This document shows, piece by piece, positions 11,374 through 35,276 of a stretch of DNA of 43,915 bases. The notes below the pieces were generated by a model that was not told the origin of the DNA, did not search any database, and worked only from the letters and a program-made list of their open reading frames with translations. The position numbers and the translations under genes are program-made. The stretch is from the NCBI RefSeq assembly GCF_001194135.2, contig NC_069009.1:11593849-11637763 (forward strand). Reading direction: 5' to 3'. How positions within the stretch are numbered: the stretch's first letter is position 1; each line of letters opens with the position of its first letter. The DNA is from Octopus bimaculoides (lineage: Eukaryota).

Positions 11374-11417
<44 letters not shown>

Positions 11418-12599: not shown

Positions 12600-12637
<38 letters not shown>

Positions 12638-12819: not shown

Positions 12820-14005
12820 TTTATATACGTTGATCCCAAATAATGAAGGACTTCTCGCGCTTAAACTCACCCTAGACCTTCAGCCTAACCCTCAACCTGA
12901 TACTCCCACACTTCATCTGGCCGAACTTGTTATTTCTCTCAACGGCTTATTGTTCGTGGGTGAGTTCCACTTACAGGTCTACAGAGTGGTCATGGGAACG
13001 AAAATGGGCCTCAATTATGCGAATCTGTTCTCCCAATTCACTGGTCCCAATCCTGAAATATACGGTTGTTATATCAATGACTGTATCGGCGTGATCTCAC
13101 TTTCCTTCGAACAACTGGACTCCTTCCGTTCCTTTATCCAATTCTTCCATCCTGTCTTTGAATTCTCCTGCACTGTCTTTAACTCTTCCGTTGGATTACT
13201 CGACATTTCTGCGAGCATACACCGCCCCGCTCTTACTACCTCCATCCACTACAAACACACTGACTCATACACCTACCTTAACTTTTGCTCCTCCAACCCT
13301 ACCCACTCCATCCCCTACTCTCACTTCCTCCGGCTACGCAGGCTCTGCTGTGACAACCATGATGTTTTAGATTCACTCTCAACTTGTGGTTCACCATTTC
13401 ATTCTATGTGGATTCCCCCTCACCACTATCCACACTGCCGTTGCCCGAGCCTTTGCTCGGACACGATCTGCAGACCGTGCCTCTGCTCTTTCCCCTCGCA
13501 CCAGCTCCACCCTTACCCATCTCTCGTTGTGTGTGTATGATACACGCACATACACATCTGCACACACCAACTGCTACACACAACACACACACATACATTA
13601 CACACGCACACACACAGGCACGTCAGATTCCACCTTCGTTCACACATAAACATATACACATTCACACAAACCATTCTTATTTAAACACATATGCTTAAGC
13701 ACTTTAGCTCGTTGGGATCACCATTATTTTCTCCCTTTCATTCAACTTCTTTTCATCATTATCCCCCTTTCATTCAACCTCTCTTTTTTTCCACTCATTC
13801 ACCATATCGGACCGCTCAACTCTACACAGTTTTTCTCTCTCCGTTTTTTTTTTTTTCATTCTCTTTTTATTATATCCTCTTATTCCTTTCTGTTGAAGAG
13901 CGTAGGCTCGAAACATAAAAGACTTCCATTTTTTCCCGAGCGTCAAACTAATACACCTGCGTGTTGCTCTTACACCTATCTTCGTTTTTTACTTTTTCTA
14001 TAAAT
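12820..14005 (+). mobile_element. Penelope-like element (PLE) reverse-transcriptase fragment and 3' terminus, degenerate
   Basis: ORF 12830..13540 contains VVMGTKMGLNYANLF, YINDCIGV (YIDD-like), LLDIS, YKHTDSYTYL and SIPYSHFLRLRRLC, motifs typical of PLE reverse transcriptases. A hammerhead-like motif lies at 13881-13953. Confidence 0.8.
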
Positions 14006-14559
14006 ATATTATCATATGCATAAACGACAAAAGCTGGTTCTTGTTCGCTTGGCGTGACTCTCTTTTTAAGAAATCATACTGTTTTCTTTTCTGTTTGTTT
14101 TTTGTTCTCTAATTCACTCCCTAGATATCTATAACTTCCAGCTTGCTCCCGTTCTTCCCATAATCATTCTACTCACCTCCAAGCACCACCAGATAAACCA
14201 AACAGTTCGTGTGAGTAGTCGTTTGCCACAAGGTTTTGATCTTAGTCAACAACCCAAAATAATATAAAATAAACTAATAACTCTAGTAATAAGCAGCATT
14301 AGCTACCACGTGACGCTTCTGTATATTTCAGCCTCTCATCTTCTACAACTAAAACTGCTTAAAAAACCGTTGTGTTTCCTCTTCCTTGTCCAGATGTCGG
14401 GCTGTATGTGACCTACCGGTAACCTCACAGAGCGTGCTTTGAGAGGAGGGTGCTTTTGGGCACCCTGCAGGATTAAATACAAGATTTGTAAAAGCGCTGA
14501 TGATCTCTGAAGAGCCAACGGCCATCCAAATAAGCAATTATCGTCACTAGTCATGCTGA

Positions 14560-16425
14560 TTATTTAGCCTTTACCCGCTTAAGACAGCAGCGATAAATAA
14601 CGGCTCTGTTGCCTTGCGACAATACCCACTTAAAAGAGGGGTTTCGGGAGTAAACCCCTGGGATAAATCAGGGGCCAGAGTCCCTAAGGCAGTTTGACAA
14701 CCTCGTTCTGGCAGGCCCAGAGGCCCCACTGGTACCTTATTGTATTGGACCTTGCCCTTCCCTTGATAATACTGATGGCGGTGGACAGGGGAGACGTGAA
14801 AAACTGCCCAGGCCTGCGCTCTGGAGAGGAAACTTCAGTACCGTCTAACTACGACGGCAAAACACGGAAAGCAACAGTCTATCGGTTTTAAGCCTGCAAT
14901 AATTGGCGTAAGAGTAAGGCGGCAGGGGCTGCTTTCGACAGAGGGAGATATGCCATTGTGCCTCACTGGATAGTTACCACCCACCTCAACCTGGGTAGCC
15001 CCCAGCCAGTTAGGTGCTATCGCAGCCCAGCTCCACCACTGGATCTTAGGGAACCTAACTTCCTGAATTATAAGCTGTAAACTTTGCACCAAGAAAAGCG
15101 AACAAGCAAGCAAGCAACGCAAAAAAACTAGCATTCAAACTTGGATGCTGGAACATAAAGGGCCATGACAACTGGTCTGTCAGAGGACCTTCAAAACATC
15201 AGCAACACACGCAAGACAGAAGTGGTCAATAACGAACTACTTCGACTCCGAGTGGATGTTGAAGCACTCCGTGAAACGAGGCTCTCAGATTCGGGGACTC
15301 TTCGTGAACGAGTCTATACTTATTTTTCTAGCAAGGGAAAGGCATATATGAAGTCAGAGATCTTGGTTTTGACTCTGCCGTGAAGAACCCTCGGTTGAAG
15401 TTGGTAGAACTCAACAGTGACGACTCAGAGCTGATACTCTCACTTCGATCGCACACTTCTGATGAGCCTGTCAACATTTTCACTGCTTATGATCCAAACC
15501 TCTATTCCTCACAAGACACCAAGGATGAGTTTTAAAATCAGGTCTCTATGAAAATAGAAATGATCCCATATTGAGAACAGCTGATGTTACTTGATGACTT
15601 CAACGCCGGAGTGGGAGCTGATCATGATTACTGGCCAGAGTGTTTGGGTCGGTACGGGGCTGGAACTAAAATGGGCAACGGCTGCTTGAGCTCTGCATGC
15701 TCCATGGACTACGTGTCACTAACACCTACTTCCAGGCCGAAGCTCAACACAAGGTCTCCTGGCGTCATCCTCGCTCAAGCCACTGGCACCAGCTAGATTT
15801 GATTATCACAAGACGCAACCACCTGAGAAATGTCCTCCTGACTCGATCTTTTCAGAGAGCCGACTGTGGCACAGGCCACTCCTTGGTTTGCTGTAATATC
15901 AAACTCCAGCCAACAAAGATGCACTGCGCCAAGTCACCGGACAAGCAGCGCATCAATACTACCGCAACTAAACAGCCAATTGAAATAGATGCATCCCACA
16001 AGACATTAGAAGACGCCCTGCTTGCAGACCCACCAGCAGGCAATGTTCAACAAAGATGGGACATTCTCAAGGACATCATCCATAGCACAGCACTGAGATC
16101 CTTTGGAAAGAGGATGAGAATGATAGATGACTGGTTTGAAGCGAATGTGAAAGAACACAATAACCCCATGGAGGAGAAGTGTGCTGAAGCACAATCACTA
16201 ATTGACCAGGGCAACGCTGCAAGCATTGAGATCATCAACGCCGGTAGAGAGCTCCTTCAAACGCAGTCGCTGCATGCATGACCGCCACTTCCGTGTAGGC
16301 CTTTACAGCCATAACAGACGCTACACCACCATCAACAGATGACACGATTTCTTCGGGCACAGATCCATAGCGTCTCGAGACTGACGGATGCCTATTACTA
16401 TACTATAACTATTCTATACTATACT
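14560..16425 (+). mobile_element. RTE-clade LINE remnant: 5' region, APE endonuclease and C-terminus, with no RT domain
   Basis: CWNI..MTTGLSEDLQNISNTRKT..INNELLRLRVD..ALRETRL, LLDDFNAGVG and VSWRHPRSSHWHQLDLIITRR are RTE endonuclease motifs. These are followed by SFKRSRCMHDRHFRVGLYSHNRRY* (decayed C-terminal Cys/His motif) and a (TACTA)-like tail. The 5' boundary is approximate. Confidence 0.8.
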
Positions 16426-16426
<1 letters not shown>

Positions 16427-16504
<78 letters not shown>

Positions 16505-16510
16505 TAGATA
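16427..16510. repeat. (TAGA)n microsatellite
   Basis: Directly visible. Confidence 0.95.
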
Positions 16511-16522
16511 TAGCTATAGATA

Positions 16523-16960
16523 TTGGGTTGGTGCATAATTATTGCGGCTTTTTTTTTTTCAACAAATTTTATTCAATAAAAACAATAACAACATGTCACA
16601 AAAGCATCTTTAAATGATTATTCCGGAGCATACCATTTCTTAAATTACTGCTTCCCATTTGCTTGGCAGACGGTCAGACCGCTATTTAAAGATGTTATAT
16701 ATACACCAAGGTACCCACATCTATCTCTCGGTAGATCTGATTGAGTATACTGTCAACAGCTGTAGAATTGAAGCAACTCTGATTCCCGTAGGGGATAAAG
16801 ATCATTACAGATATGTGACTATTTTTCAGACTGTTGATGGCAATCTGTATATTGTATCAATGTCTACTTTGGTGAGAAGAACCCACTCTGGCAGCCAGCG
16901 ACCTCTCCACCGACTGGAATTCTCTATCAGATTAACAGTTTGAACAATTTATCAATTTTA
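16523..16960 (-). mobile_element. Mariner remnant (one TIR plus transposase C-terminus)
   Basis: TA|TTGGGTTGGTGCATAATTATTGCGGC resembles mariner TIRs (TTAGGTTGGTGCAAAAGTAATTGCGG type). The minus strand reads DRLPSKWEAVI, like a mariner C-terminus. The inner boundary is uncertain. Confidence 0.6.
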
Positions 16961-17039
16961 ATGTTTTAGTGCCTGAACTGTGACACCGGTTTTAACGGCT
17001 TTTTCTTCATTTTCATCACCAAAACATGTCTCCTTATTA

Positions 17040-17040
17040 A

Positions 17041-17092
<52 letters not shown>

Positions 17093-17730
17093 ATATCATC
17101 ATCATCATCAGTATCATCATCATCGTCGTCGTCGTCGTCGTCGTCGTTATCATCATCATCTTCATTATTATTTAAAATCTGTTTTCCATGCTGGCACGGG
17201 TTGCATTGTTTCACAGGATTTGGCCAGCTGAAGAAATACCCGGGCTCCATGTTTATTAGCGTATGGTTTCTACGACAGGATGCCCTTCCTAATGCCAACC
17301 ACTTTACATAGTGTACTGGGTGCTTCTAGGCAGCATTGGCATGGGTATTTTTTATGTGAGATAGGCACCCGTGATCCCACAAAATTAGGACCTCTCAGCC
17401 AAAAAAGGACGCAGAGGAATATGACTGTATGCAAGGACAACCAGTATTAATTTCACATATCTTCTCAACCACAGCAAACCACCAGACGTGTCGTTCCTAT
17501 TTCAACCCCTCTTTGAGGCCCAATGCCTGAAGCTCCTTTCTCACCACTTTATTGCACACCTTCCTTCGTCGACCCCTTCCACACATTCCTGCCACAATTA
17601 GAGATCATCACATCTTGATGCAGTTATCTTCATCCATATGAATTACATAACCATACCAGTGCAGTCTTCTCTCTTGCGCACAACATCCGATGCCTCATAA
17701 ACCCAGTTTTTCTCTCAAATCCACTTAATT
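17040..17730 (-). mobile_element. RTE LINE 3' end with (ATG)n tail, antisense
   Basis: The minus strand reads ERRLHWYGYVIHMDEDNCIK...GRGRRRKV, an RTE C-terminal motif. It is followed by the family C tail and (CAT)n at 17043-17163. Confidence 0.75.
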
Positions 17731-18333
17731 ATGGAAACCTTATTGATCTGTTTGGATATGTCTGTGTGGCGTTGATTTAGTTGTTATGTCTGAAGACATT
17801 ACTATGTTGTTGGTGTCTTCCTTCCTGGTATAACATACATTATTTGTGGTGTCCTATTTATATNNNNNNNNNNNNNNNNNNNNNNNNNNNNNNNNNNNNN
17901 NNNNNNNNNNNNNNNNNNNNNNNNNNNNNNNNNNNNNNNNNNNNNNNNNNNNNNNNNNNNNNNNNNNNNNNNNNNNNNNNNNNNNNNNNNNNNNNNNNNN
18001 NNNNNNNNNNNNNNNNNNNNNNNNNNNNNNNNNNNNNNNNNNNNNNNNNNNNNNNNNNNNNNNNNNNNNNNATGTTAACCAATAATGCGTGTTTTGCTCA
18101 ATATAATGATCATAAATATTGTCTTAATGGAGAAAGTAAAGTAAAAACAAATGATAATGAGAAATGAACTATAGATGATGTAAGAACTCAATACCTCAAT
18201 ATTGTGTAAACATTTTAATCACCAGATCGACAAACTATGTGTATATGTAGTTGAACTGTTGTGTAAGTTGGGTCATCTTTACCATGTATTTGTGTAGTAT
18301 TGTACTCGTCATTTTATATTTCATCATTTGTAG

Positions 18334-18509
18334 TGCTGCACTGAGCTCAAACGAAGCAAAGATAATAGGCTCTCTGGTGTGGTGGTTGCTTGCTATCTAG
18401 CCCGCCAGGGTGCCGACTTTTACCATAAAAATAACAAGAATAACACACCATTGGACCTCATTGAAAATCGAGCTTTGAAAGAAAAATTAAAAGCATGTTT
18501 ACTATCACG
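18334..18509 (+). CDS. ANK-RING-Death gene, last ankyrin exon (Mind bomb-like), phase 0-2
   Basis: catttgtag acceptor and CG|gtaaat donor. Open frame CCTELKRSKDNRLSGVVVACYLARQGADFYHKNNKNNTPLDLIENRALKEKLKACLLS(R). VACYLARQGADFYHKNNKNNTPLDL resembles the final Mind bomb ankyrin repeat ([25 protein letters not shown], from memory). Confidence 0.92.
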
Positions 18510-19199
18510 GTAAATATTCACTGGCAATGACAATATAAACCAGTAAATTTTCTATTTTGTATATAATAATGTTTATATGTTTGTATTATCTTAATTCTAC
18601 CAATACCCTATACTATCATAGTGCCTTCATGAAAGGCCACACAATACTAAGAACAACAATAAATAGAATGCAGTTGTTAGATGATCAAAGAAAGGGCACT
18701 ATTTTAATTATATTCACATCATTGGTTGTGTTGACAGATGTACCTCACTGTCAACCCACACCTACCTCTCTCAATTCCCAGTTTTAAAGATTTGTCACCA
18801 ATAGCAAAATGTAGAGCTAAATAATAACGTTAATGAATAGATTTTGAAATTACTATTTAGAAGTAAGTGAAATTTAACTGTCTACATATCTTCACAAAAG
18901 AGAATTGCCATGGAACAATTCATTCTTGTAAAACATAAACCATTCCTCATGTTTTAGGCTTCTTGGTCACCTTAAACTCCTGTATTTTATCAGTTTCAGC
19001 AATTTCATTGCCATACATTTGTCTATATTAACTGCTGTTGAAGCAGACAAATTATTCTCTTAGATAATATACTTAACTTTCTTTGTCTCTTGAAATTGAG
19101 ATATTGTTTATAGACGTTGATTTTTGGACTGTATAAATGTGGTTCTGCTTCATTCGATATACAAGCATTGGTAGGATTTCTTTATGGGAACATTATAAT

Positions 19200-21549: not shown

Positions 21550-21686
21550 GTGTATGCTTTGTGAAGTAAATGAGGCCACTGTGGAGTTACAACCCTGTGC
21601 ACATAATGCGGTATGTGGAGAGTGCTACACAATTAAACTTAGAAGATGCCCCAAATGCAAAACATGTATAAGCCCAAGAGTTTTTG
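21550..21686 (+). CDS. ANK-RING-Death gene, RING-HC (C3HC4) exon, phase 2-1
   Basis: cttctgcag acceptor and G|gtaagg donor. Encodes (R)CMLCEVNEATVELQPCAHNAVCGECYTIKLRRCPKCKTCISPRVF, i.e. C-x2-C-x11-C-x-H-x3-C-x2-C-x7-C-x2-C with all eight ligands present. Confidence 0.95.
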
Positions 21687-22046
21687 GTAAGGATACTTTT
21701 TGATGACCTGCTTGTTTGTCTCATGGAATTTATGGTGTGCAATAATGTATTTCATATTACTGTGTAGACCCAGGTCTGTCAGAATCTGACAGACTTTTAA
21801 TAAAAGATGTTCCAGCTGCCTTTTCTCGTTGATAGTATTTCTATGACTACACCCACTGAATATTGTCTTTATCTGAGTAGGAAACTTTTCACATATCAAA
21901 TGAGTACCGTCTGCAGCAGACGACTAATGCTTTCTAATGAAACCTAAATGGCGACTAACTGAAATATCAATAAATCTTGACGGTCCATTAGCAAATATAA
22001 GTTTTTAGCAATCAATTGTTTGCCAGCTATTATATGTGGTTAATGT

Positions 22047-22268
22047 GTTTCAGTTATTGGACTCCGGCCATGCTGGAGCACCGTCTTTAGTCGAAGAAAT
22101 CGACTCCAGAACTTATTCTTTGTAAACCTAGTACTTTAGTACTTGTTCTATAGGTATCTTATGCCGAGCTGCCAAGTTACGGGGACGTAAACATACCAAC
22201 ATTGGCTGTCAAGCGATGACTGGGGGACAAACACAGACACACAAACACACACACATATATATATATAT
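22047..22268 (-). mobile_element. SINE family A, 3' half, antisense
   Basis: GTTTCAGTTATTGGACTCCGGCCATGCTGGAGC...AAGTTACGGGGACGTAAAC matches 2950-3140. Confidence 0.85.
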
Positions 22269-23160
22269 CTAGTTGATTTCTATAAATTTTACCTTCATCT
22301 GAGCCATCTTGTTTGTCAGAATGACTGAAAACACGTTCCATACCTAAATTCGAATTGAATCGTTTAGCTGTAAAGTAATTCTGTTAAAGATATCAATATA
22401 ACTGAAATTTCATAAATTATCCACTGAGGTTAGCACAGATGGTAAAATGGATAAAACAGAAGACAATAGATTTAATATTCCATTTTTTGGAACAGGTGAG
22501 TTAATGAAAATTTTTGGCTAGTTATATATAATTTTAGTAAGTTTACAGAGAGGTTATTGTTATTGCTGTTGTTATTCAGTTAAATGTCTCTCATAATCTG
22601 GTAGAATTACGATGAAATGTGTTCTATGAGTGAATTCCGTCGTATTTCTCTGATAGTAAATCTATCATTACATCCACGAGACAACGGTTGTTTCTCTTTC
22701 TTTTCAAGGTAGATACTGGCTGTAAGATACAATACAATCAATGATATCGCCCTCATCATTTATCAGCTGATTTTCACGTTCCCATGGACAGGCTTGATAG
22801 TCACTTAGTCAGTTCTTATTCATAGTTACTGCCCCCTTGATTGGTTGAGGAACACAGCTAAAGTATTCCAGCTTTTCAATGGTGATATGCCCTTCCCAAC
22901 ACCAACCACTTTCTAAAGTGTCCTGGGTAAATTTTATCGTGGCACAGGTATTAGAAAGATTGTCCTCTGCATAAAAAGATTAAACGTTCCTCTCAAACTT
23001 ATAGTACCACTAGAGAAAGTCGAAAAATGTTGTCCGAAACGGTTGTGATCACTAATTGACCACTGATGATTAGAATGTCTCTCACTGATAAAATACAGAT
23101 AATTTGTAAAGATAAAAGATTATTAGTTTAAAGTGTAAAATTCGGAAATGTTTATTTCAG

Positions 23161-23211
23161 ACTGTCCAAAATTGTCCGACAAGGGTGTCCAGACGGTGGC
23201 AGAGTCAGTTA
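23161..23211 (+). CDS. Candidate 51-nt symmetric mini-exon E1 (phase 1-1), paralog of the first Death-domain exon
   Basis: tttatttcag acceptor and A|gtgagt donor; open frame (D)CPKLSDKGVQTVAESV. Flanks are homologous to those of 32478-32549. No transcript evidence available. Confidence 0.65.
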
Positions 23212-24393
23212 GTGAGTATAAAATAACTGTACCTAATTTATTTCTATAAAGTTTACCTTTACTTGAGCTATTTTGTTTGTCAGAATGATGGAGAGTAGGT
23301 TCCATTCCTAATTTTTGGCTGATAGGGAAGTTGTAAAGTAATTTTATTACAGATATCAATATTACTCATATTTCATAAACTATCCACTGAGGTTTGTTGT
23401 AATATGTTTCACTTGTTAGGGTATATACCCAAAATGCCTCAGGTCAGAACATATATATATATATATATATATATATCTTCGTTACAATATCATAAATCAG
23501 GAGAAGAGCATAGCCTATAAAATATAGAGCAGTTATTTATTGTACACATTTTCGGAAATTTTTACTTCTAAATTGCAAGACCTAGCTATCAAGTGAAGGA
23601 AGACAACTCGCCCGACCCTAATTTTTTAAGAGGAATATTTCTTGAATTATCTCCCCCGTTCTTGTGTTTAAAAAAACATTCTTTGCAGAGTACGGTTATT
23701 GTTTAAAGAAACTGAAGAGATGTCTAGTTCTAGTTCACGCTNNNNNNNNNNNNNNNNNNNNNNNNNNNNNNNNNNNNNNNNNNNNNNNNNNNNNNNNNNN
23801 NNNNNNNNNNNNNNNNNNNNNNNNNNNNNNNNNNNNNNNNNNNNNNNNNNNNNNNNNNNNNNNNNNNNNNNNNNNNNNNNNNNNNNNNNNNNNNNNNNNN
23901 NNNNNNNNNNNNNNNNNNNNNNNNNNNNNNNNNNNNNNNNNNNNNNNNNNNNNNNNNNNNNNNNNNNNNNNNNNNNNNNNNNNNNNNNNNNNNNNNNNNN
24001 NNNNNNNNNNNNNNNNNNNNNNNNNNNNNNNNNNNNNNNNNNNNNNNNNNNNNNNNNNNNNNNNNNNNNNNNNNNNNNNNNNNNNNNNNNNNNNNNNNNN
24101 NNNNNNNNNNNNNNNNNNNNNNNNNNNNNNNNNNNNNNNNNNNNNNNNNNNNNNNNNNNNNNNNNNNNNNNNNNNNNNNNNNNNNNNATATATATATATA
24201 TATATATATACGTATAGGTATATATACATAATTAGGGTCCAGCAAAAATTGCTTCACCACGTACCGAAATTTAGAAAATAGCAGTTAAATACTATTCCAC
24301 TACCATATATCTCCCAGACAGCAGCACTCGCAACTCACACAGGCAAAAAGGAAACAATAACGAATCCACCCGGCTTTCATTAACTGTATACGC

Positions 24394-24542
24394 GTTTCAG
24401 GATTAAAGAGATGTAAATTAAATTACTCAACTTACTTCAATCTTCAGTACAGTATTCCAAATTATAAATCATAATTTGGAATACTATACTGAATATGGAA
24501 GTAAGTTGAGTAATATAATTTACATCTCTTTAATCCTGAAAC
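24394..24542. repeat. 72-bp-arm inverted repeat with 5-nt loop
   Basis: 24394-24465 is the reverse complement of 24471-24542, with 4 mismatches. Loop AAATC. Confidence 0.9.
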
Positions 24543-27500
24543 ACCTATATTGTGAATAATGGTGGTAATGAAACTGAAGCCAATGACGGTGACAGTGTTG
24601 CACCCGGTAGTCTCAGAGATTCTGGCCCGGCTCCAGCCTGTCGATACCCAGAAAGGGACCACCACACACGGCGTAGATGGAGCAAGCAAATTAATGCTGT
24701 GGTCATGGAATGTTATTACCTGGGCAACCCGGTAGATGAAAATGGTGCTCAAATTAGGAGTTACCGACAACGTATGATCATTGGAGAGAAAAGGGATTGT
24801 TTCAACTCACGGAACAGAGACTATGTGATCAAGCTAGAGCAATAAGAAAAATTTGTTGATTCACAGAAGTAGTGCTCAAAGTTATCAAAAGACGGGTCAT
24901 GGAAAATAGCAGCAGAGATAAGAAGGAAAATACAGTTCTTACTAATAAGAGTAATCTCATAGCACAGGAAAGAAGCAGTGGTAGCTTACTTGATGAGAGA
25001 TATATAGATCATCTAAGAGAAGACGTTAAGACTAATAGCGACATAACAGATGAGCAAAAGGCAATCTACGACAGAATAAAGGTGACACTACAAGAGAACG
25101 ATAGCGACATTATTTGTAACCTTAAAAAGGTTGATCAATGGAAATTGAACCAAGAAACGGAAAGTGTGAATGAAATTCTGAAGTACATCAGAACAAACAT
25201 CACAGAAACAAATAATTTGATTAAGGCAGCAGGTATTGTTGTAGCAGAAAATGTGGGTGTCGATGTCAAGAAAAAGAAACATACTGGGATTGACAAAAGA
25301 AAAGATCCATGGTGGAAAAGAAGAATCCAGGGAGGGTTAGACATGCTCTCGAAGGAAATTTCTGTGTTAGACCAAAAGCAAAAGGGGAGCTTAAAAGTGA
25401 ACAAAAATACAGATTACTGAAAAGGAAGTATAACATTGAAAGAAAGGGCCTGAAAATATTAGTGGAGGAACTGAAACAGTGCCTCGTTGCAAAGAAAGGA
25501 AAGACGGTAAGATACGACCAAAGAATGAAGGGTGGGTTACTACTAGAAATGGTTATTCAGATTAGATCAGAAGAGATTCTATAAAGAAATAGATGAAGGA
25601 TGTACAGATGAAAAGTTGATACCAGATAACATTGAAAGTCAAAGGTTTTGGAGTGACAGCTGGAGCAAAGGCAAGGAGTACAAGAAGGATGCTGAATGGT
25701 TACAAGAACTGAAACAAACAGTAGTCTGTCCAAAGCAGAAAGAACTAGTCATTTCAGTTAGGGAAGTGAAGGAAGTCGGCAAAACAAAATTAACAACTAG
25801 AAGGCCCCGGGACCAGATGGAGTTCAAGGCTACTGGATCAAAAGATTTGGTGAATGTCATGCATGAATAGCTGCGCAGCTAAACACCTTGTTAAATGCCG
25901 ACCAAGCAACACCAGAATGGTTGACATTGTGTTGGACAGGGCTGTGCTTGAAAAAGATCGAAAAAGGCAAACGGTAGACAATTACTGGCTGATATCTTGT
26001 TTGCCGCTTATGTGGAAATTATTGATTGGAATACTCTCAGAGTCAATGTATGAACATCTAGAAAAAAATGGAGTCCTGCCACATGAACAGAAGGGCTGCA
26101 AGTGTAAGTGCAGAGGTACCAAGGATCAACTCCCGATAGATAAAACTGTACTCAGAGACTGCAAGAGGAGGAAAAGTAACTTAGCCATATCATGGATCCT
26201 AAGGCGTACGATATGATTCCACATTCTTGGATTATGGAGTGTATGAACCAGTTTGGGACTGCATCGAATGTTGAGCGAATGCTTGGAAAAAGTATGGCAA
26301 ATTGGAGGACGGACCTGACAGCATATGGAAGTAGTTTAAGGACAGTAGAAATTAGGAGGGGCATCTTCCAAGGAGACTGCCTGTCCCCACTGATCTTTGT
26401 ACTGTGCTTGCTACCACTGACACTGATTCTGAGGAAAGCAAAAGCTGGGTATGTATTCAAAAGCCGCTAATAAAAAGTCAACCATTTGCTATTAATGGAT
26501 GATCTCAAACTTTATGGTAAAGATGAAGCCCAAGTCAGTTCCCTCGTTGATACGGTGTATATCTTCAGTGCTGATATCAGAATGGAGTGCGTGGAGGTTA
26601 TGAAGCAGATTGAAGAGACGGGCTATAAGTACTTGGGGATTTTGGAAATGGATAAATTAATGGAGAAAGAAATGACAGAAGAATTTAAGGTGAGTACTTA
26701 CGCAGACCGAGACTGATCCTAAAGTCGAAATTAAACGGAAGGAATAAGATCGAAGCTATCAACACCTGGGCGGTTTCAATCCTTAGATATGGAGCAGGGG
26801 TAATCGCATAGACAGGAGACGAACTAAACAGCTTAGACAGAAAGACAAGGAAGTTGCTAACTAGATATGGGCCACTCCACCCAAAAAGTGATACAGACTG
26901 ACTGTATGTACCAAGAAAAATAGGGGTAAGAGGGCTTATTGGATGCGAACACAGCATTAGAGCAGAAGAAAACAACATAGCATGGTATGTAAAAATGCCA
27001 CAGAACCGCAATTATTAGAAGTAGGAAGGTCAGGCTTGTGTAGGATGAAAGAAATTGAAAACGAATGAAACTGAAAATAAGTGGATAAAGAAAAGAATGC
27101 ATGGTCAATTTTATAGGGACGTTGAAGATAAGACAGACAGAAAAAAGATGGCTGTGGATCACTAAGAGTGATTTAATACCGGAAACGGAGGCCCTAATCT
27201 TTGCTGCCCAAGTGCAAGCACTAAGAACAAACTACATAAACTACAGAATAGACGACACATCAGAAAGTGATAAGTGCAGAATCTATGGACAAAATGGTGA
27301 AACCGTATGGCATATTACCAGCCAATGTACACCACTATCTCAGAAGGAATATAAGAGACGCCACGACAATATAGCCAGGCTTGGTCCATTGGACATTTTG
27401 CAACAAGTATGGACTTGATAGAGCAAAAAATTGGTACGACCACAAACCTGAAGGCATTGTCGAAAATAGAAATGCAAAACTCCTATTGGATTTTATGATT

Positions 27501-27922
27501 CAGTACGACCATGAGATTGAGAATAGGAAGCCAGACACAGTCTTAATTGAGAAAGAAAGCAAACTATGCTGGATCATAGCTATAGCATGCCGAGCTGACA
27601 GCAAGGTATGCGATAAGGAAGAAAGAAAAGTCGAGAGATATGACAGGTTAGCTTGGTAAGTTAAGCACTTGTGGTCGATGAAAAAGGTGGTAGTAGGACC
27701 AATATACTGGGAAATACTGGGAACAGTGAGCAAAAATCTCGAGAAGTACGTGGAACAAATAGGAGTTGCAATAAGGGTGGAGCACTTTCAGAAAACAGCA
27801 CTGCTTGGGACCGCTCGAATACTCCGGAAGGTGATCGAAAAATAAGATGTGTTACCTTAGTTCACTGGTAGTGAACAGCTGACACTGTAGTACATCTCCA
27901 GCGTTAGAAGCTGTGCAAAGGC
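24543..27922 (+). mobile_element. Near full-length, inactivated R4/Dong-clade (RLE) non-LTR retrotransposon
   Basis: Frameshifted ORF pieces in the expected order: [85 protein letters not shown] (RT), YKYLGILE, TEALIFAAQ, CRIYG..ETVWHITSQC (zinc knuckle) and NRKPDTVLIEK (restriction-like endonuclease). Confidence 0.85.
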
Positions 27923-28030
27923 AAGAAGAAGAAGAAGAAGAAGAAGAAGAAGAAGAAGAAGAAGAAGAAGAAGAAGAAGAAGAAGAAGAAGAAGAAGAAG
28001 AAGAAGAAGAAGAAGAAGAAGAAGAAGAAG
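27923..28030 (+). repeat. (AAG)36 pure microsatellite at the LINE 3' end
   Basis: Directly visible; 108 bp. Confidence 0.95.
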
Positions 28031-28646
28031 ATCGAAAAATACCTTAGGAATAAGAACCTGGGTTCGAAATTTCCCCAAGACACCTGGCTGGGGGGTATAT
28101 CAACCGAAACGTTGTGTTAACAACAAATATTAGGTTGAATATCCGTCAAATGTAAATAATGTAAATAATGAACATACTGATAAAGTGCGATGTGAGCAGT
28201 TAAAATCAAAGATTACCAGCAACAACGTTTGACAAACAGAGCAGTTGTATGTTTATCCTACGTGAAGCGGCATGTCACGATCTTGTGCTTAGATCTTTGA
28301 GGGCCAATTGGTCGACATTGGAATTAAACAGAAGAAGAGGAGATATTGGCTGGTGAACTTTAAAGGTGAGAAGACAATGAGATGTCATAGATTTGGCACA
28401 GATATAAGAAAAAAAAACAACTCAATTAACATTAAAACTGTTGTAAAGGGATAATTAGATGAGGTAATTGCTACACTGTTAGATATATGGGACATCTTAA
28501 TATAGAGATGAGATTGAGGAAGATCAATCAATTTTGTTGTAGCCCTAAATATTAGGCATCAGACCATTTTTCAAAGTATAAAGATATTGACCAAAACCAT
28601 AGTGATCACTGATTGACCATTAATGACAGGAATGTCTCACAATAAT

Positions 28647-28866
28647 TATTTCTTTATTGCCCACAGGGGGCTAAACATAAAGGGGACAAACAAAGAGATT
28701 AAATCGATTACATCGACTCCAGTGCGTAACTGGTACTTATTTAATCGATCCTGGAAGGATGAAAGGCAAAGTCGACCTCGGTGGAATTTGAACTCAGAAT
28801 GTAACGGCAGACGAAATATCGCTAAGCATTTCACCCGGCGTGCCAACGATTCTGCCAGCTCACCGC
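28647..28866 (-). mobile_element. SINE family B variant, antisense, with apparent AATAAT target-site duplication
   Basis: Reverse-complement match to the family B head and body, with a different tail. AATAAT at 28641-28646 and 28867-28872. It interrupts sequence that is continuous in the paralogous unit near 32390. Confidence 0.85.
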
Positions 28867-28943
28867 AATAATGAAATATAAATTATTGATATAGATAAAG
28901 AAATTTTACTGTAAAGAATAAAACTTGGGAATATTTATTTTAG

Positions 28944-28994
28944 AGAATCCAAACTTTGAAGAGAAACAAAGGGAGACGATGGCAAAGAGAGTTG
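28944..28994 (+). CDS. Candidate 51-nt symmetric mini-exon E2 (phase 1-1), paralog of the first Death-domain exon
   Basis: tttattttag acceptor and G|gtgagt donor; open frame (K/E)NPNFEEKQRETMAKRV. The upstream flank is homologous to 32000-32477. Confidence 0.65.
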
Positions 28995-29001
28995 GTGAGT
29001 A

Positions 29002-29036
29002 TAACCCTAACCCTAACCCTAACCCTAACCCTAACC
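29002..29036. repeat. Interstitial telomeric-type repeat (TAACCC)x5.8
   Basis: Five perfect TAACCC units plus TAACC, equivalent to TTAGGG on the minus strand. Confidence 0.9.
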
Positions 29037-29039
29037 TCA

Positions 29040-29170
29040 TGTCTATTTTGCCATGGTTTCTATGGGTGAATACCCTCCCTAATGCCAACAACTTCAAAGT
29101 GGGACGTGTTTACTGGGTGCTTTTATGTGGCATCAGCAGCAGTGAGGTCACCAAGTATCTTGCAACGCAA
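29040..29170 (-). mobile_element. Family C / RTE-tail fragment, antisense
   Basis: CCCTCCCTAATGCCAACAACTT...TACTGGGTGCTTTTATGTGGC matches 17280-17330. Confidence 0.55.
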
Positions 29171-30861
29171 GGCCCTTCACCTGAGGGGTGGAGTAGCATT
29201 AAGGGGCAGAAAAAGTAGTTTTGCATTAGAGTGGAAACATGGCTGCCTTATGTGGGAAAAGAGAGATGATGGTGAAATATGATGGTGAGTGCTGCAGAGG
29301 TGGAGTGTGGGTGGGTTTATGAGATTGCGAAAGGTGAGTGGTAGATGATGGTGGGAATGTAATGAGTGGACACCACGTGGCAGGAGCAGGTTTGGGCGGT
29401 GTCCTTCGGGGACGACATTCAGTGCAGCCATTATATGTGCAAGTAGGTACATGAGAGACAATGAGATTGCAGAATNNNNNNNNNNNNNNNNNNNNNNNNN
29501 NNNNNNNNNNNNNNNNNNNNNNNNNNNNNNNNNNNNNNNNNNNNNNNNNNNNNNNNNNNNNNNNNNNNNNNNNNNNNNNNNNNNNGGGGGGGGGCATGAT
29601 GGATTGTAGAGGAGCATTGTTGGGGAACAGGCATGAGCTTGATTTTATTTTGGTGGGTGGGCCTTCTCAAGCACAGCAAACTGTCAATTGTCTGTTAGGT
29701 TCAACATCTGAGGTTCATTTCTGATGAGGGATCACAAACGTTGGATGATGCACAGGTGAGGTTTGATAGCAATATGCTATATTCTCGAGAACCAGTTCTT
29801 TTGTTCCATTTCAGATATTTTCACTGTAATAACGCGTGGGTGAATATGTATATGTTGTTAATGAGGATCTGTGCAGGTGTAAATTGTTTGAGGATGCTTG
29901 AATCACTTTCTGCTCCACTTGTGTAGATTTAATCTTTGCTCAAAAAAGTTGCTTTATTAAGGAGGATATGAGATTCAAATGTCTTCAAATATTTCCTTAA
30001 TCAGATGATATTCTGATGAACTTTGATGAGGGAAGTTAGAATTAATGATAGCCAGCAGTAACATTTAACAAAGAGAGCAGGTGTATGTTTATCCTAGGCG
30101 AAGTAGTGTGTGATGTGTTTGTCGCTATATCTTTGATGACTAACCTGGATGACACTGGAATTAAGCAGAAGAGGAGAAGAATGTTGGCTAATGGAAGTCT
30201 ATAGGTGAGAGGAGAATGCTAAAGAGTTGGCAAAGGTATCAGAAAGAAAAGATAGAACTGTGATAAAAACAGTTTTATCAAGTGATAATTAAATAAGAAA
30301 ATTAAAGCAGTGTTAGATCATTTGTCTTAATAGAGAGAGGTGATTTAGGACAGCTAGTCTGTTTTGTTGTGGACCTACATATTAGGTAATTGCATATTAG
30401 GTAAAATAGCATCACCTAATTGACTTCTGCAAATTTTCAGTTTACCCGAGCCATTTTGATTGTGAGAATGACTGAGAACTGGTTACGTTCCTAATTTCCA
30501 ATTGAAAGATTAGCTGTAAATAATTGGATTAAAAACGTTACTGAAACTTCCTGAAATCGAGTTTGGTATGGTTAGTAAAATTCATAAATTAGAATACACA
30601 AGAGAGTTAATGCTGTTTTGGGGGGACGGAGAACTAAAATATGATGTTAAATGTAAACAGGTGAGTTAATGAGGAAGATCTTGTTTCTTTTTCTACTAAG
30701 GTCTTTACTAAGTTTTCCGATAGATTATTGTTGTTGTTATGTAACCAGATGTCTGTCATGATATGTTGTCTCTTGTTTGGGTGTGTACCCAGAATGTCTC
30801 AGGTTAGAATATATAGGATTGTTATAAATTAAAAGAATTAAACATGAACTCTTTATAAATA

Positions 30862-31657
30862 CAGTGTGTCGACAAAGTCTGGGTACATGGGGATTTACAC
30901 ATACTTTAAGAAATTATTTCTTCTTATATTTAATTGTTTATGTTATGATTTTATTTACTCCATGTACCCACATGGGGATTAACACATACTTTAAGAAATT
31001 ATTATTTCTTATATTTAATTGTTTATGTTATGATTTTATTTACTCCATGTACCCACATGGGGATTAACACATACTTTAAGAAATTATTATTNNNNNNNNN
31101 NNNNNNNNNNNNNNNNNNNNNNNNNNNNNNNNNNNNNNNNNNNNNNNNNNNNNNNNNNNNNNNNNNNNNNNNNNNNNNNNNNNNNNNNNNNNNNNNNNNN
31201 NNNNNNNNNNNNNNNNNNNNNNNNNNNNNNNNNNNNNNNNNNNNNNNNNNNNNNNNNNNNNNNNNNNNNNNNNNNNNNNNNNNNNNNNNNNNNNNNNNNN
31301 NNNNNNNNNNNNNNNNNNNNNNNNNNNNNNNNNNNNNNNNNNNNNNNNNNNNNNNNNNNNNNNNNNNNNNNNNNNNNNNNNNNNNNNNNNNNNNNNNNNN
31401 NNNNNNNNNNNNNNNNNNNNNNNNNNATTTAATTGTTTATGTTATGATTTTATTTACTCCATGTACCCACATGGGGATTAACACATACTTTAAGAAATTA
31501 TTATTCCTTATATTTAATTGTTTATGTTATGATTTTATTTACTCCATGTACCCACATGGGGATTAACACATACTTTAAGAAATTATTATTCCTTATATTT
31601 AATTGTTTATGTTATGATTTTATTTACTCCTGGTACCCAGACTTTGTGGACACCCTG
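30862..31657. mobile_element. Same MITE family as 8627-8753, with its interior expanded into an 85-bp tandem array
   Basis: TA|CAGTGTGTCGACAAAGTCTGGGTACATGG at the left end and ...GGTACCCAGACTTTGTGGACACCCTG|TA at the right end. The 85-bp period is measured at 31441, 31526 and 31611. Gap at 31092-31427. Confidence 0.9.
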
Positions 31658-32477
31658 TATATGTATAATGATCATTAAACTATATTTAATGTTAAACTTA
31701 ATATTGGACTCTGGACATGTCTTTACATTTAAATAAAGTATTGGTGTTAACATAAAATATAAAGATAGGAATAAAATATGAGTTCCCAGTGTGACTTGAA
31801 AAACACAACACCTTGTTATTAACAATATGTAAAATACACTTACTCCATTTAGATAATATTTACGATCCATAAGAGCATTCTTATATTCACACTTGTTAGT
31901 TTTTATATTATATCAATGCTAATAGAGGCACAGCTTTCTGAGTCTGTCATCTTTTGGTTTTAATTCTGACTTAACAGAGAGAGAAGGTATTATGTTTATC
32001 TTGCTTGAAGTTGTCTGTTAAGTGTTTGTGGCTAGATCTTTGATGTGGCTAGATCTTTGATGTGGCTAGATCTTTGGTTGACATTGGAATTAATTAGGTG
32101 AAAGAATGTTGGTTAGTGAAGTCCACAGGCGAGAGGACAATGACATGTCATAGATTTGGCACAGATATAAGAAAGAAAAGCTAGAACTATGAGAAAAACA
32201 GTCTCATCAAATGATAATGAAATGAAATAATCGCAAGCTTATGTAGGATGTCTTAATACAATGACGAGGTTTGGGTAGGTTTATCTATAAATGTGAACCT
32301 AAATATTGAACTATTACATGGAACCATGATGGAAAGTATAAAAATGTTGGCCAAAACCATAGTGGTCACCAGTTGACCATTGGTGATAAGAATGTCTCAC
32401 TATGTTAAACTACAGATTATTTGTAGATATAAAGGAATTTTACAGTAAATTATAAACTTTGGAAACATTTATTTCAG

Positions 32478-32549
32478 GGAGTCAAAAGCTGAAGGAGAAG
32501 GATCTCCTGAGAGTGGCTAAGAGGTTAGGAAGCAATTGGTGGCAAGTAG
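32478..32549 (+). CDS. ANK-RING-Death gene, first Death-domain exon E3 (72 nt, phase 1-1)
   Basis: tttatttcag acceptor and G|gtgagt donor. Encodes (G)SQKLKEKDLLRVAKRLGSNWWQV(G), matching the Death-domain L..vA..LG..W..lg..LG pattern that continues into the last exon. Confidence 0.9.
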
Positions 32550-33019
32550 GTGAGTATAAAATTACAGTACCTAACTGAATTCTATAAATTTTACCTTCAC
32601 CTGAGCTATCTTTTTTTATTTTGTGAGAATGAATGAGAACAAGTTACATTCTTAAGTTCCTATTTAAAGGCTAGCAGTAGAAAAATTCTATGACAAATAT
32701 TCTTGAAATTTCATAAAATATTCGCTGAGGTTTTTATGGTTGGTAATAATGGACAAACTAGAAAACACAAATAGCATTTAATATTGCCTTGTGGACGAAG
32801 GAACTAAAATATGTTGTTTAAGGGTAAACAGGTGAGTTAACGACAAAGTTTTGGTTTGTTTTACATTTTCACTGAGTCTGCTGTTAGTTTATTGTAATTA
32901 AAGAAATGTACCAAAGTTAAATTCCATGACAAAGCATCTTTATTCCAATATAAGGCCTTGAGATTCCAGTTATATTGCCATATTGGAATAACTTTACCAC
33001 TGAGGCAAGTGAAATCGAA

Positions 33020-35088: not shown

Positions 35089-35276
35089 GCATTTTTTTAG
35101 GCATTCAAGCTACTGAACTGAAAATTGATGATGACTCGAATGACACTGCAAGACGGGGTTTCCTGATGTTATATGAATGGTTTAAAGGTTGTGATCCAGG
35201 TACACGAAATCTCGAAACACTAAGGGCAGCTCTTGAAGAAGCCGAGTGTTCCACTGCACTGCAATATTTATCATAA
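35089..35276 (+). CDS. ANK-RING-Death gene, terminal coding exon (rest of the Death domain and stop)
   Basis: cttttgcag acceptor, phase 1. Encodes (G)IFLGIQATELKIDDDSNDTARRGFLMLYEWFKGCDPGTRNLETLRAALEEAECSTALQYLS, then TAA at 35274-35276. ML..W and TL..AL are Death-fold motifs. Confidence 0.92.

What the first reader, a model, noticed from the sequence alone, without database searches (positions are those of the whole stretch)
23101..32609. Cassette exons have diverged more than their own flanking introns
Manual ungapped counts: E1 vs E3 about 28/50 identical (56%) and E1 vs E2 about 29/51 (57%). By contrast the 60 nt upstream of E1 and E3 match at about 45/60 (75%) and the 60 nt downstream at about 52/60 (87%). 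Most exon changes are non-synonymous (CPKLSDKGVQTVAESV / NPNFEEKQRETMAKRV / SQKLKEKDLLRVAKRL), yet frame and length are kept. Coding sequence evolving faster than intron is the reverse of the norm and suggests diversifying selection, as in host-pathogen interaction surfaces. Caveats: the sample is small and the intron windows include constrained splice signals.
Basis: partly seen in the sequence, partly recalled or inferred. Interest (0 to 1): 0.75.

Follow-up and report, generated by a model that had tools for sequence, protein, structure and literature searches.

The report
Octopus death-domain exon copies outdiverge introns
In an octopus gene, short spare copies of one exon really do differ more from each other than the introns around them, but the pattern looks like old exon types sitting in younger, reshuffled intron DNA, not like an arms race.

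Summary
The counts are exact (E1-E3 28/51, E1-E2 29/51, flanks 45/60 and 52/60). The excess holds against 160-480 nt of intron, which is 71-77% identical.

The locus is the 3' end of an Octopus-only ankyrin-RING-death-domain ('MIB2-like') gene. Five ~1-kb tandem units lie between the RING exon and the last exon.
- E3 (72 nt) encodes death-domain helix 1 and is conserved.
- E1 and E2 (51 nt, phase 1-1, intact splice sites) are shortened derivatives that lack the LG..WW motif.
- Two units have lost the exon.

In paralogues such cassettes are annotated as alternatively spliced. They map to a predicted disordered RING-DD spacer.

Diversifying selection fails its own test. Pooled dN/dS is about 0.6, and synonymous sites are as diverged as non-synonymous ones. 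Recent cassette duplicates change at the intron rate.

The real oddity is discordance. Exons split cassette versus DD with 94% bootstrap, and half the type-diagnostic changes are synonymous. More than 600 intron sites give a star tree.

The best reading is old exon classes embedded in younger introns, produced by recombination and array turnover. That turnover is directly visible in the family. No assembly gap touches a compared stretch.

The parts
21551..21688 (+). RING (C3HC4) exon of the ankyrin-RING-death-domain gene. It ends in phase 1, so it can join E1, E2 or E3 in frame.
   Evidence: Sequence and splice sites. Pfam zf-C3HC4_3 at E=7.6e-5, below the curated cut-off. Homologous RING exons in Octopus 'MIB2-like' proteins.
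22266..22564 (+). U0: remnant of a repeat unit. Only the downstream-intron part is left; the exon and upstream part are replaced by a repeat and a microsatellite.
   Evidence: 72-79% identical to the downstream introns of U1, U3 and U4.
23015..23460 (+). U1: repeat unit carrying cassette E1.
   Evidence: Self-BLAST and alignments.
23161..23211 (+). E1: 51-nt phase 1-1 cassette (CPKLSDKGVQTVAESV). It derives from the first death-domain exon and lacks 21 nt (the LG..WW part).
   Evidence: Its closest relatives are annotated cassettes of O. sinensis paralogues (La_c 69%, L6_c 65-68%).
28174..29004 (+). U2: repeat unit carrying cassette E2. A SINE-like insertion lies at 28642-28870, and the downstream intron is replaced from 29002 by (CCCTAA)n.
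28944..28994 (+). E2: 51-nt phase 1-1 cassette (NPNFEEKQRETMAKRV).
   Evidence: Its closest relative is an unannotated intact cassette at L006 4444-4494 (exon 36/51, upstream intron 73/86).
30010..30815 (+). U3: repeat unit whose exon and proximal flanks are deleted.
   Evidence: The upstream part matches U2 and U4 and the downstream part matches U1 and U4. The junction lies at about 30386/30402.
31971..32900 (+). U4: repeat unit carrying E3.
   Evidence: 75-80% identical over 560-1010 nt to the DD-exon units of paralogues.
32478..32549 (+). E3: 72-nt first death-domain exon (SQKLKEKDLLRVAKRLGSNWWQV; helix 1 and the LG..WW motif).
   Evidence: The family profile aligns from this exon onward to the PIDD, RIPK1 and ankyrin death domains (E=2.6e-10). 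In the paralogue model this exon is a helix with pLDDT about 94. Foldseek top hits are all death domains.
35089..35276 (+). Last coding exon: the rest of the death domain and the stop codon. An alternative acceptor 9 nt downstream is also in frame.
   Evidence: Collinear with L001, L005 and L006 at 74-76% over 1.7-2.9 kb.
5720..18510 (+). Upstream ankyrin-repeat exons of the same gene. The open segments are 5720-5929, 11092-11334 and 18334-18510; exact exon ends were not determined.
   Evidence: ORF list. Pfam Ank at E=7.7e-22.

Best explanation
What it is (shown). The region is the 3' end of an Octopus-specific ankyrin-RING-death-domain gene. It holds a tandem array of five ~1-kb units, all descended from the segment that carries the first death-domain (DD) exon.
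- The last unit keeps that exon (E3).
- Two units keep shortened in-frame derivatives (E1, E2).
- Two units have lost the exon.

What the cassettes do. This rests on annotated isoforms and a structure model of paralogues. E1 and E2 add 17-residue modules to an unstructured spacer between the RING and the DD. They are included or skipped by splicing. They are constrained for frame, splice sites and exon-like composition, but hardly for sequence.

Why exons differ more than introns (inferred). The comparison is between old, functionally different exon classes: spacer cassettes versus DD helix 1. The split between these classes carries as many synonymous as non-synonymous changes, so it is old. 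The intron DNA of all units, in all genes sampled, coalesces in a star at about the time the family radiated. Exon and intron therefore have different histories. The array's introns were renewed or homogenised by unequal crossing-over, gene conversion and unit turnover, while selection kept the exon classes apart. Since then, cassettes have drifted at roughly the neutral rate.
For: Array anatomy.

Family and isoforms:
- All 37 hits are Octopus.
- O. sinensis MIB2 isoforms X1 and X3 differ by 17 aa.
- LOC115230672 X1 and X2 differ by 17 aa, and X3 lacks the 24-aa DD exon.
- O. vulgaris proteins carry 2 or 3 tandem 26-aa cassettes.

DD identity and the spacer.

Constraint on cassettes:
- All 6 independent cassettes are open in frame (joint chance 0.0014).
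- Their lengths are 51, 72 or 78 nt, and splice sites are intact.
- Their G+C is 0.41-0.51, against about 0.3 in introns.

Discordance between exon and intron:
- Quartet (E1, La_c | E3, La_d): exon informative sites 12:0:0; intron sites 6:6:6 of 310.
- Deep intron quartet: 4:3:5 of 309.
- Fisher test, 12/51 versus 10/620: p=4e-9.
- The NJ exon tree splits cassette from DD with 94% bootstrap and an internal branch of 0.25. In the intron tree no split exceeds 43% and internal branches are at most 0.03.
- Type-diagnostic columns: 8/44 in the exon (4 synonymous, 4 non-synonymous, by my codon-by-codon reading of the columns) against 5/220 in introns.
- Synonymous 4/10 versus intron 5/220: p=2e-4.

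Neutral-like recent evolution:
- The O. vulgaris triple cassette has 6, 2 and 7 differences per 78 nt, against 5.7-7.4% in 2.3-4.5 kb of flanking unit. Non-synonymous to synonymous counts are 4:1, 2:0 and 4:2.
- E1 versus La_c: exon 69%, intron 66%.

Recombination is active in the family:
- Between two O. sinensis paralogues, identity jumps from 73% to 93% about 50 nt upstream of the last exon.
- O. vulgaris and O. sinensis loci that are 95% identical over 5 kb carry different cassette arrays and unrelated RING exons.
- The order of cassette types differs between this window and L006.

Precedent: in primate L/M opsins, exon divergence exceeds intron divergence, and exon trees are deeper than intron trees because of intronic gene conversion (PMC3213168, PMC3924837).
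Against: - Intron trees do not cluster units of the same gene (6:6:6, 4:3:5). There are no significantly long identical tracts between window units. So there is no sign of ongoing within-gene conversion. Homogenisation would have had to stop everywhere at about the time of the family radiation, which is not explained.
- Conversion tracts would have had to spare only 50-70 nt of exon.
- Sample sizes are tiny: 14-16 codons and about 10 synonymous sites per exon.
- Pairs are not independent.
- NG86 is unreliable at this level of divergence.
- One within-type pair (E2 versus L6_c0) shows the exon at 71% against the intron at 85%, with roughly 12 non-synonymous and 1 synonymous change (hand count). 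That looks like protein-level acceleration.
- Inclusion of E1 and E2 in transcripts of this particular gene is not shown.
Confidence: 0.5

Rival explanations
1. Episodic burst after duplication. Right after the DD exon was duplicated, the upstream copy lost its helix-1 role. It was then remodelled quickly by positive selection, for example to stop a second helix 1 from interfering with folding. All of this happened in the short interval before the gene family radiated.
For: - The intron tree is a star with only a very short cassette-versus-DD stem (5/220 diagnostic columns), which fits a short interval.
- The cassettes lost the LG..WW motif and the hydrophobic LLRV face.
- Asymmetric divergence: E3-type exons are conserved and cassettes are not.
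Against: - The exon stem is at least about 8-fold the intron stem, which would need an extreme rate.
- Half of the diagnostic stem changes are synonymous (4 of about 10 synonymous sites, against 4 of about 31 non-synonymous sites). This is the opposite of what protein-level positive selection predicts (with my codon assignment).
- At least three exon classes (E1-like, E2-like, 78-nt type) are each 50-57% apart, which would require several such bursts.
Confidence: 0.2
2. One reading: continuing diversifying selection on the cassette peptides, as at host-pathogen interfaces.
For: - Exon divergence exceeds intron divergence in cassette-cassette comparisons (0.53 versus 0.65 identity).
- The closest pairs have dN at or above dS: E1-E2 0.71/0.30; E1-La_c 0.36/0.26; E2-L6_c0 roughly 12:1.
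- Death-domain E3 ligases plausibly act in innate-immune or cell-death signalling. This is general knowledge of DD proteins, not tested here.
Against: - Pooled dN/dS is 0.57-0.64.
- The three disjoint cassette pairs give pS 0.53 and pN 0.37.
- Synonymous differences at conserved codons are also elevated.
- Recent duplicates evolve at the intron rate.
- The cassette is predicted to be an unstructured spacer.
Confidence: 0.1
3. The exons are ordinary and neutral. It is the introns that are slow, because the flanks of alternative exons carry splicing-regulatory or other functional elements.
For: - The nearest flanks are the best conserved (75-87%). Several blocks are shared by all 14 units examined.
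- Conserved intronic flanks are a known hallmark of alternative exons (general knowledge).
Against: - Identity is uniform (about 72-77%) out to about 500 nt and in the exon-less units U0 and U3.
- It equals the bulk intron identity between this gene and its paralogues (74% over 2.9 kb).
- In recent duplicates the intron and exon rates are equal.
- Slower introns would rescale the tree, not erase its internal branch.
Confidence: 0.08
4. E1 and E2 in this gene are dead pseudo-exons, or products of mis-scaffolding, and the pattern has no biological meaning here.
For: - Each cassette lies on its own contig between N-gaps.
- Taken alone, the open frames of E1 and E2 are weak evidence (P=0.45 and 0.35).
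- No annotated protein contains them.
- Arrays in paralogues do contain dead units.
Against: - The canonical splice sites of both are perfectly kept, along with their 3n length and exon-like G+C.
- Their closest relatives are annotated, spliced cassettes.
- The gap-free paralogue loci that carry cassettes (L001, L005, L006) have the same architecture.
- Neutral decay cannot exceed the intron rate, so this reading does not explain the excess.
Confidence: 0.07

Closest known systems
Tandem exon duplication giving alternatively spliced exons (described by Kondrashov & Koonin 2001 and Letunic et al. 2002; cited from memory)
   Same: Adjacent homologous exons with homologous flanking introns. They have the same phase (1-1) and 3n lengths. 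Paralogue isoforms differ by exactly one unit.
   Different: The exons are not mutually exclusive: several cassettes are co-included (P0009 has three). The copies have changed role, from a structural helix of a folded domain to a disordered spacer. Units are frequently lost (U0, U3, and dead units in L005 and L006).
Primate L/M opsin genes: intronic gene conversion with selection keeping exon differences (PMC3213168; review PMC3924837)
   Same: Exon divergence is significantly greater than intron divergence. The exon tree places the duplication deep and the intron tree places it late.
   Different: In opsins, introns cluster by species and conversion tracts are detectable. Here the introns form a star, with neither by-gene clustering nor detectable tracts. 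The units are exon-sized modules inside one gene, not whole genes.
Accelerated evolution of exons relative to introns in venom and toxin genes (snake PLA2, cone-snail conopeptides; from memory, not checked here)
   Same: Coding exons are more diverged than the flanking introns.
   Different: Those cases are defined by dN/dS above 1 in the mature-peptide exon. Here the pooled dN/dS is about 0.6 and the peptide is an intracellular spacer.
Mind bomb 2 (MIB2) E3 ligase, the name that NCBI gives the relatives
   Same: Ankyrin repeats followed by a C-terminal C3HC4 RING.
   Different: These proteins end in a death domain, and the annotated relatives are only 120-275 aa. No MIB/HERC2 or ZZ exons were seen among the window's ORFs, but this was not searched systematically. 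The family was found only in the genus Octopus.

Membership tests
Tandemly duplicated alternative exons | Neighbouring exons are homologous to each other, and so are their flanking introns. | tested here: met
   Exons are 55-57% identical. Flanking introns are 71-77% identical over 160-480 nt.
Tandemly duplicated alternative exons | Frame-compatible: same phase, length a multiple of 3. | tested here: met
   All are phase 1-1. Lengths are 51, 51 and 72 nt here, and 51, 72 or 78 nt in paralogues.
Tandemly duplicated alternative exons | Alternative use in transcripts. | tested here: inconclusive
   Annotated isoforms of paralogues differ by exactly one cassette. No transcript data exist for this gene, and no database protein contains E1 or E2.
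Tandemly duplicated alternative exons | Mutually exclusive choice of one copy. | tested here: not met
   Paralogue proteins carry 0, 1, 2 or 3 cassettes in addition to the DD exon.
Exon under diversifying selection | dN/dS above 1. | tested here: not met
   Pooled NG86 estimates are 0.64 (cassette-cassette) and 0.57 (cassette-DD). The closest pairs give 1-3 but are not significant.
Exon under diversifying selection | Synonymous divergence no greater than the neutral (intron) divergence. | tested here: not met
   pS is 0.54-0.60 against an intron p of about 0.30-0.35. Diagnostic synonymous sites are 4/10 against 5/220 in introns.
Intron homogenisation by gene conversion (opsin type) | Exon divergence exceeds intron divergence, and the exon tree is deeper than the intron tree. 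| tested here: met
Intron homogenisation by gene conversion (opsin type) | Introns of copies in the same gene or genome cluster together. | tested here: not met
   Quartets give 6:6:6 and 4:3:5. Within-gene intron identity is no higher than between-gene identity.
Intron homogenisation by gene conversion (opsin type) | Detectable conversion tracts. | tested here: inconclusive
   No significant long identical runs between window units (best P=0.02 in 10 tests). A sharp 73% to 93% identity breakpoint between two paralogues shows that exchange does occur in the family.
Death domain (Pfam PF00531) | Sequence or profile match and a helical-bundle fold. | tested here: met
   The family profile matches the PIDD, RIPK1 and ankyrin DDs (E=2.6e-10 to 6e-9). 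Seven of 8 members match PF00531 (best E=6e-11), but the window's own sequence reaches only E=0.095. The paralogue model best matches the RIPK1, p84 (THO complex subunit 1), RAIDD and PIDD DDs, with target TM-scores of 0.63-0.75.
MIB2 orthologue | N-terminal MIB/HERC2 and ZZ domains, two RINGs and no death domain. | tested here: inconclusive
   A death domain is present and only one RING exon was found. Annotated relatives are 120-275 aa with Ank, RING and DD only. The 5' end of the gene was not searched systematically.

The most novel reading that the evidence does not exclude
The cassette exons of this Octopus-specific RING-death-domain family might undergo exon-limited accelerated change at synonymous and non-synonymous sites alike. 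The cause could be exon-targeted mutagenesis, or repeated exon-sized sequence exchange anchored in the conserved splice flanks. Either would generate a variable repertoire of spacers in a putative cell-death or innate-immune ligase while the surrounding introns stay similar.
Probability: 0.1. Interest if true: 0.75.

Novelty: new member of a known kind. Interest (0 to 1): 0.4.

Why it matters
The locus shows how a piece of a folded domain (death-domain helix 1) can be duplicated in tandem, shortened and recycled as a modular, alternatively spliced spacer. This happened in a gene family found so far only in Octopus.

It is also a caution. 'Exon more diverged than intron' is not by itself evidence of positive selection. 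Here synonymous sites and tree discordance point to a mosaic history.

If the exon-intron discordance proves general across the family, it would give a compact system for studying array turnover, gene conversion and exon identity in cephalopod genomes.

Tried and rejected
- Splice-signal artefact: rejected. The excess persists after removing -20..-1 and +1..+8, and also against deep intron.
- Alignment artefact in the exon: rejected. Gap-optimised alignments raise identity only to 57-66%.
- Base-composition effect: too small. Intron G/C sites match at 0.60 and A/T sites at 0.75, which predicts 0.68 for the exons.
- Saturation of introns: rejected. Ungapped stretches are 75% identical, against about 29% expected for random sequence of this composition (my calculation, not a tool result).
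- Recent within-gene gene conversion in the window: no signal.
- Intron constraint: argued against by the exon-less units, the bulk intron identity and the recent duplicates.
- Pfam on the window's own DD sequence alone gave no significant hit. The family profile and the fold search were needed.
- Genomic loci for P0003 and P0011 were not on record.
- A literature search found no description of this Octopus family.
- Docking/selector RNA pairing was considered by eye only. A 6-nt complementarity between the conserved upstream and downstream blocks is not conserved across units, so it was not pursued.


Full report
OBSERVATION.
- E1 at 23161-23211 (51 nt), E2 at 28944-28994 (51 nt) and E3 at 32478-32549 (72 nt).
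- Each follows a ...tttatttcag or tttattttag acceptor, precedes a gtgagtat donor, and is in phase 1-1.
- E1 and E2 lack 21 nt of E3. The protein alignment (MAKR-V against VAKR-LGSNWWQ-V) and the gap-optimised DNA alignment place the deletion over the LG..WW codons.

ASSEMBLY GAPS. All three gaps (23742-24187, 29476-29585, 31092-31426) are in introns. None touches an exon or a compared flank, so frame continuity is not at issue.
- They separate the contigs that carry E1, E2, an exon-less unit and E3. The order of these contigs therefore rests on scaffolding.
- The third gap lies inside one 85-bp tandem array, with the same unit on both sides.
- The RING exon, unit U0 and E1 share a contig.
- Gap-free paralogue loci have the same order: RING, cassette units, DD exon, last exon.
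- Continuity across the first two gaps could not be tested.

WHAT THE LOCUS IS. On the + strand the window encodes the following:
- ankyrin-repeat exons (Pfam Ank, E=7.7e-22);
- a C3HC4 RING exon at 21551-21688;
- the three exons of the finding;
- a last exon at 35089-35276.

E3 plus the last exon form a death domain.
- A profile of the family aligns from E3 onward to the PIDD, RIPK1 and ankyrin death domains (E=2.6e-10 to 6e-9).
- Seven of 8 family members match PF00531.
- An AlphaFold model of a paralogue matches only death domains at the top of a PDB fold search.

Protein searches found relatives only in Octopus sinensis, O. vulgaris and O. bimaculoides, named 'MIB2-like'. A literature search found no description of the family.

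THE ARRAY. E1-E3 are not isolated look-alikes. They sit in five tandem copies of a roughly 1-kb unit:
- U0 (22266-22564): the exon is lost.
- U1 (23015-23460): carries E1.
- U2 (28174-29004): carries E2. A SINE-like insertion lies 73 nt upstream, and a (CCCTAA)n tract replaces the downstream intron.
- U3 (30010-30815): the exon is deleted.
- U4 (31971-32900): carries E3.

ARE THE CASSETTES REAL EXONS? In paralogues, yes.
- O. sinensis MIB2 isoforms X1 and X3 differ by one 17-aa block between RING and DD.
- LOC115230672 isoforms X1 and X2 differ by 17 aa, and X3 lacks the 24-aa DD exon itself.
- O. vulgaris proteins carry two or three tandem 26-aa cassettes.

I fetched the genomic loci (L001-L007) and located the cassettes.
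- All six independent cassettes are open in frame (joint chance 0.0014).
- Their lengths are 51, 72 or 78 nt, and their splice sites are intact.
- Their G+C is 0.41-0.51, against about 0.3 in the introns.
- In the model of P0007 the cassette lies in an unstructured, low-confidence stretch (pLDDT below 50 for residues 38-54, about 59 for 51-60), while the DD exon forms a helix at pLDDT about 94.

So the cassettes are spliced modules of a disordered RING-DD spacer. They are constrained for frame, splicing and composition, but hardly for sequence. For E1 and E2 of this particular gene, inclusion is inferred, not shown.

IS THE EXCESS DIVERGENCE REAL? Yes.
- Every unit pair, the exon-less ones included, is 71-77% identical over 160-480 nt of intron. 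Windows of 51 columns as low as the exon values are essentially absent.
- Without the splice cores, the exon-versus-intron contrast gives Fisher p = 0.007-0.08 per pair, with a distance ratio of about 2.
- The excess survives gap-optimised exon alignment and a correction for exon G+C (expected 0.68, observed 0.52-0.55).
- Across 14 units from five genes, the mean identities are as follows:

| Comparison | Exon | Intron |
|---|---|---|
| Cassette-cassette | 0.53 | 0.65 |
| Cassette-DD | 0.52 | 0.69 |
| DD-DD | 0.86 | 0.80 |

E3-type exons therefore behave normally, under purifying selection. The anomaly concerns the cassettes.

IS IT DIVERSIFYING SELECTION? The evidence says no.
- E1 or E2 against E3-type exons give dN of about 0.53 and dS from 0.97 to saturated. 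All three codon positions are equally diverged.
- Pooled dN/dS is 0.64 (cassette-cassette) and 0.57 (cassette-DD).
- NG86 is shaky at this divergence, so I also looked only at codons whose amino acid is unchanged. By hand count from the sequences, 7 of 13 such codons differ synonymously. That is more than intron-like divergence predicts.
- The three recently duplicated O. vulgaris cassettes differ at 6, 2 and 7 of 78 nt. Their 2.1-kb units differ by 5.7-7.4%, which is the same rate. Non-synonymous to synonymous counts are near the neutral expectation.
- E1 against its O. sinensis counterpart is 69% in the exon and 66% in the intron.
- One pair, E2 against an unannotated cassette in L006, does look protein-accelerated. 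The exon is 36/51, the intron 73/86, and I count roughly 12 non-synonymous changes to 1 synonymous. It is not significant on its own.

THE REAL ODDITY: DISCORDANT HISTORIES.
- In the quartet (E1, La_c | E3, La_d) the exon has 12 informative sites, all grouping by exon type. The 310 intron sites split 6:6:6.
- A further 309 deep-intron sites split 4:3:5. The combined Fisher test gives p=4e-9.
- The NJ exon tree splits cassettes from DD exons with 94% bootstrap and an internal branch of 0.25. The intron tree is a star: no split exceeds 43% and internal branches are at most 0.03.
- Type-diagnostic columns number 8/44 in the exon against 5/220 in the introns.
- Reading those 8 columns codon by codon, four are synonymous whatever the order of changes. 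That is 4 of about 10 synonymous sites against 5/220 intron sites (p=2e-4).

A burst of positive selection on the peptide would not produce synonymous change. Slow introns would rescale the tree but not erase its internal branch. The simplest reading is that the exon classes are much older than the intron DNA now around them.

A PLAUSIBLE MECHANISM, VISIBLE IN THE FAMILY.
- Two O. sinensis paralogues jump from 73% to 93% identity about 50 nt upstream of the last exon.
- O. vulgaris and O. sinensis loci that are 95% identical over 5 kb carry different cassette arrays (three 78-nt units against 51-nt units) and unrelated RING exons.
- Arrays contain intact, dead and exon-less units, and the order of cassette types differs between this window and L006.

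Unequal crossing-over, unit birth and death, and gene conversion therefore operate here. The L/M opsin genes are the textbook precedent: exon divergence exceeds intron divergence and exon trees are deeper than intron trees (PMC3213168, PMC3924837).

WEAKNESSES OF THIS EXPLANATION.
- Unlike in opsins, the introns here do not cluster by gene, and I found no conversion tracts among the window's units. Homogenisation would have had to end at about the time of the family radiation.
- Conversion would have had to spare only the 50-70-nt exons.
- The exons are tiny, the pairs are not independent, and alignment choices matter.

I therefore hold the mosaic explanation at about 0.5. The alternatives are an episodic post-duplication burst at 0.2, ongoing diversifying selection at 0.1, intron constraint at 0.08, and pseudo-exon or assembly artefact at 0.07.

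VERDICT. The interpretation as diversifying selection fails its own test.

The feature is a new example of two known kinds of thing. One is tandem exon duplication that yields alternative cassettes. The other is exon-intron discordance in recombining duplicates. Its unusual aspect is that a structural helix of a death domain was recycled into a modular spacer in an Octopus-only gene family. Interest is moderate.

Noticed in passing
window 24560-27860 and 27923-28031; also 24379-24557: A degenerate LINE-type retrotransposon lies in the E1-E2 intron on the + strand. It carries a reverse transcriptase (Pfam RVT_1, E=2.7e-11) with many stops and frameshifts, and ends in a perfect (AAG)36 tail. Just upstream is a 179-nt near-perfect palindrome (88% identical to its reverse complement).
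   Followed up: partly
window 28642-28870 (core 28704-28886); copies at 7092-7307 (-), 9428-9660 (-), 11944-12161 (+), 6508-6609 (-): A SINE-like element of about 160-220 nt is present in five copies (74-83% identical). One copy is inserted 73 nt upstream of E2 without disturbing the acceptor region.
   Followed up: no
window 29002-29036: A telomere-like (CCCTAA)5.8 tract starts 8 nt after the E2 donor. From there the E2 downstream intron is no longer homologous to the other units.
   Followed up: partly
window 30885-31091 and 31427-31639; single copy at 8624-8763: An 85-bp tandem repeat flanks the assembly gap 31092-31426 on both sides, so the gap lies within one array. A related copy sits 22 kb upstream.
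   Followed up: partly
window 2474-2758: A remnant of a Tc1/mariner-type transposase (Pfam DDE_3, E=4.6e-7) on the + strand.
   Followed up: partly
window 39145-42084: About 3 kb of purine-rich (GAAA)n-like satellite on the + strand (GC skew up to +0.87, AT skew up to +0.93), interrupted by a gap at 40284-40606.
   Followed up: no
window 33109-33341 versus 33586-33817: A 233-nt direct duplication (93.6% identical) brackets the gap 33432-33585. It may be a true tandem duplication or an assembly artefact.
   Followed up: no
L006 11058-13773 versus L001 18420-22503: Two O. sinensis paralogues are 73% identical through the DD-exon unit. About 50 nt upstream of the last exon they jump to 93%, and stay there over 1.9 kb. 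This is a sharp recombination or gene-conversion breakpoint.
   Followed up: partly
L005 (O. vulgaris) versus L006 (O. sinensis): The two loci are 95% identical over 5 kb (L006 6808-11847) yet carry different cassette arrays and unrelated RING exons. L005 has three 2.1-kb units with 78-nt cassettes, and L006 has 51-nt cassettes. This points to rapid array turnover or chimeric genes between sister species.
   Followed up: partly
last exons of L001, L005 and L006: Among these close relatives, the death-domain coding sequence shows dN at or above dS in two of the three pairs (for example 12 non-synonymous changes to 1 synonymous in the last exon; over both DD exons, dN 0.095 versus dS 0.047). The third pair (L001 versus L006) has dN below dS. 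This hints at relaxed or positive selection on the death domain itself.
   Followed up: no
L006 4444-4494; L006 ~8766-8815 and L005 ~18330: An intact but unannotated E2-type cassette (SPNFKEKEAKMMAGAV) lies upstream of the annotated cassette in L006. A further unit, shared by L005 and L006, has its acceptor AG mutated to AA and is a likely dead pseudo-exon.
   Followed up: partly
L007 7476-7601 (O. bimaculoides, protein P0023): The annotated protein reads through the polypyrimidine tract into a 72-nt cassette ('...REIFISV|NPHSENKGVQ...'). The gene model probably starts inside an intron. This cassette keeps the full 72-nt length without the LG..WW sequence.
   Followed up: no
E3-type exons of five genes (W_E3, La_d, Lb_d, L5_d, L7_d): The first death-domain exon is conserved at synonymous sites too (pooled pS 0.13). 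Synonymous divergence in the last exon of the same gene pairs is 0.6-0.8. This suggests nucleotide-level constraint on, or homogenisation of, this exon.
   Followed up: no
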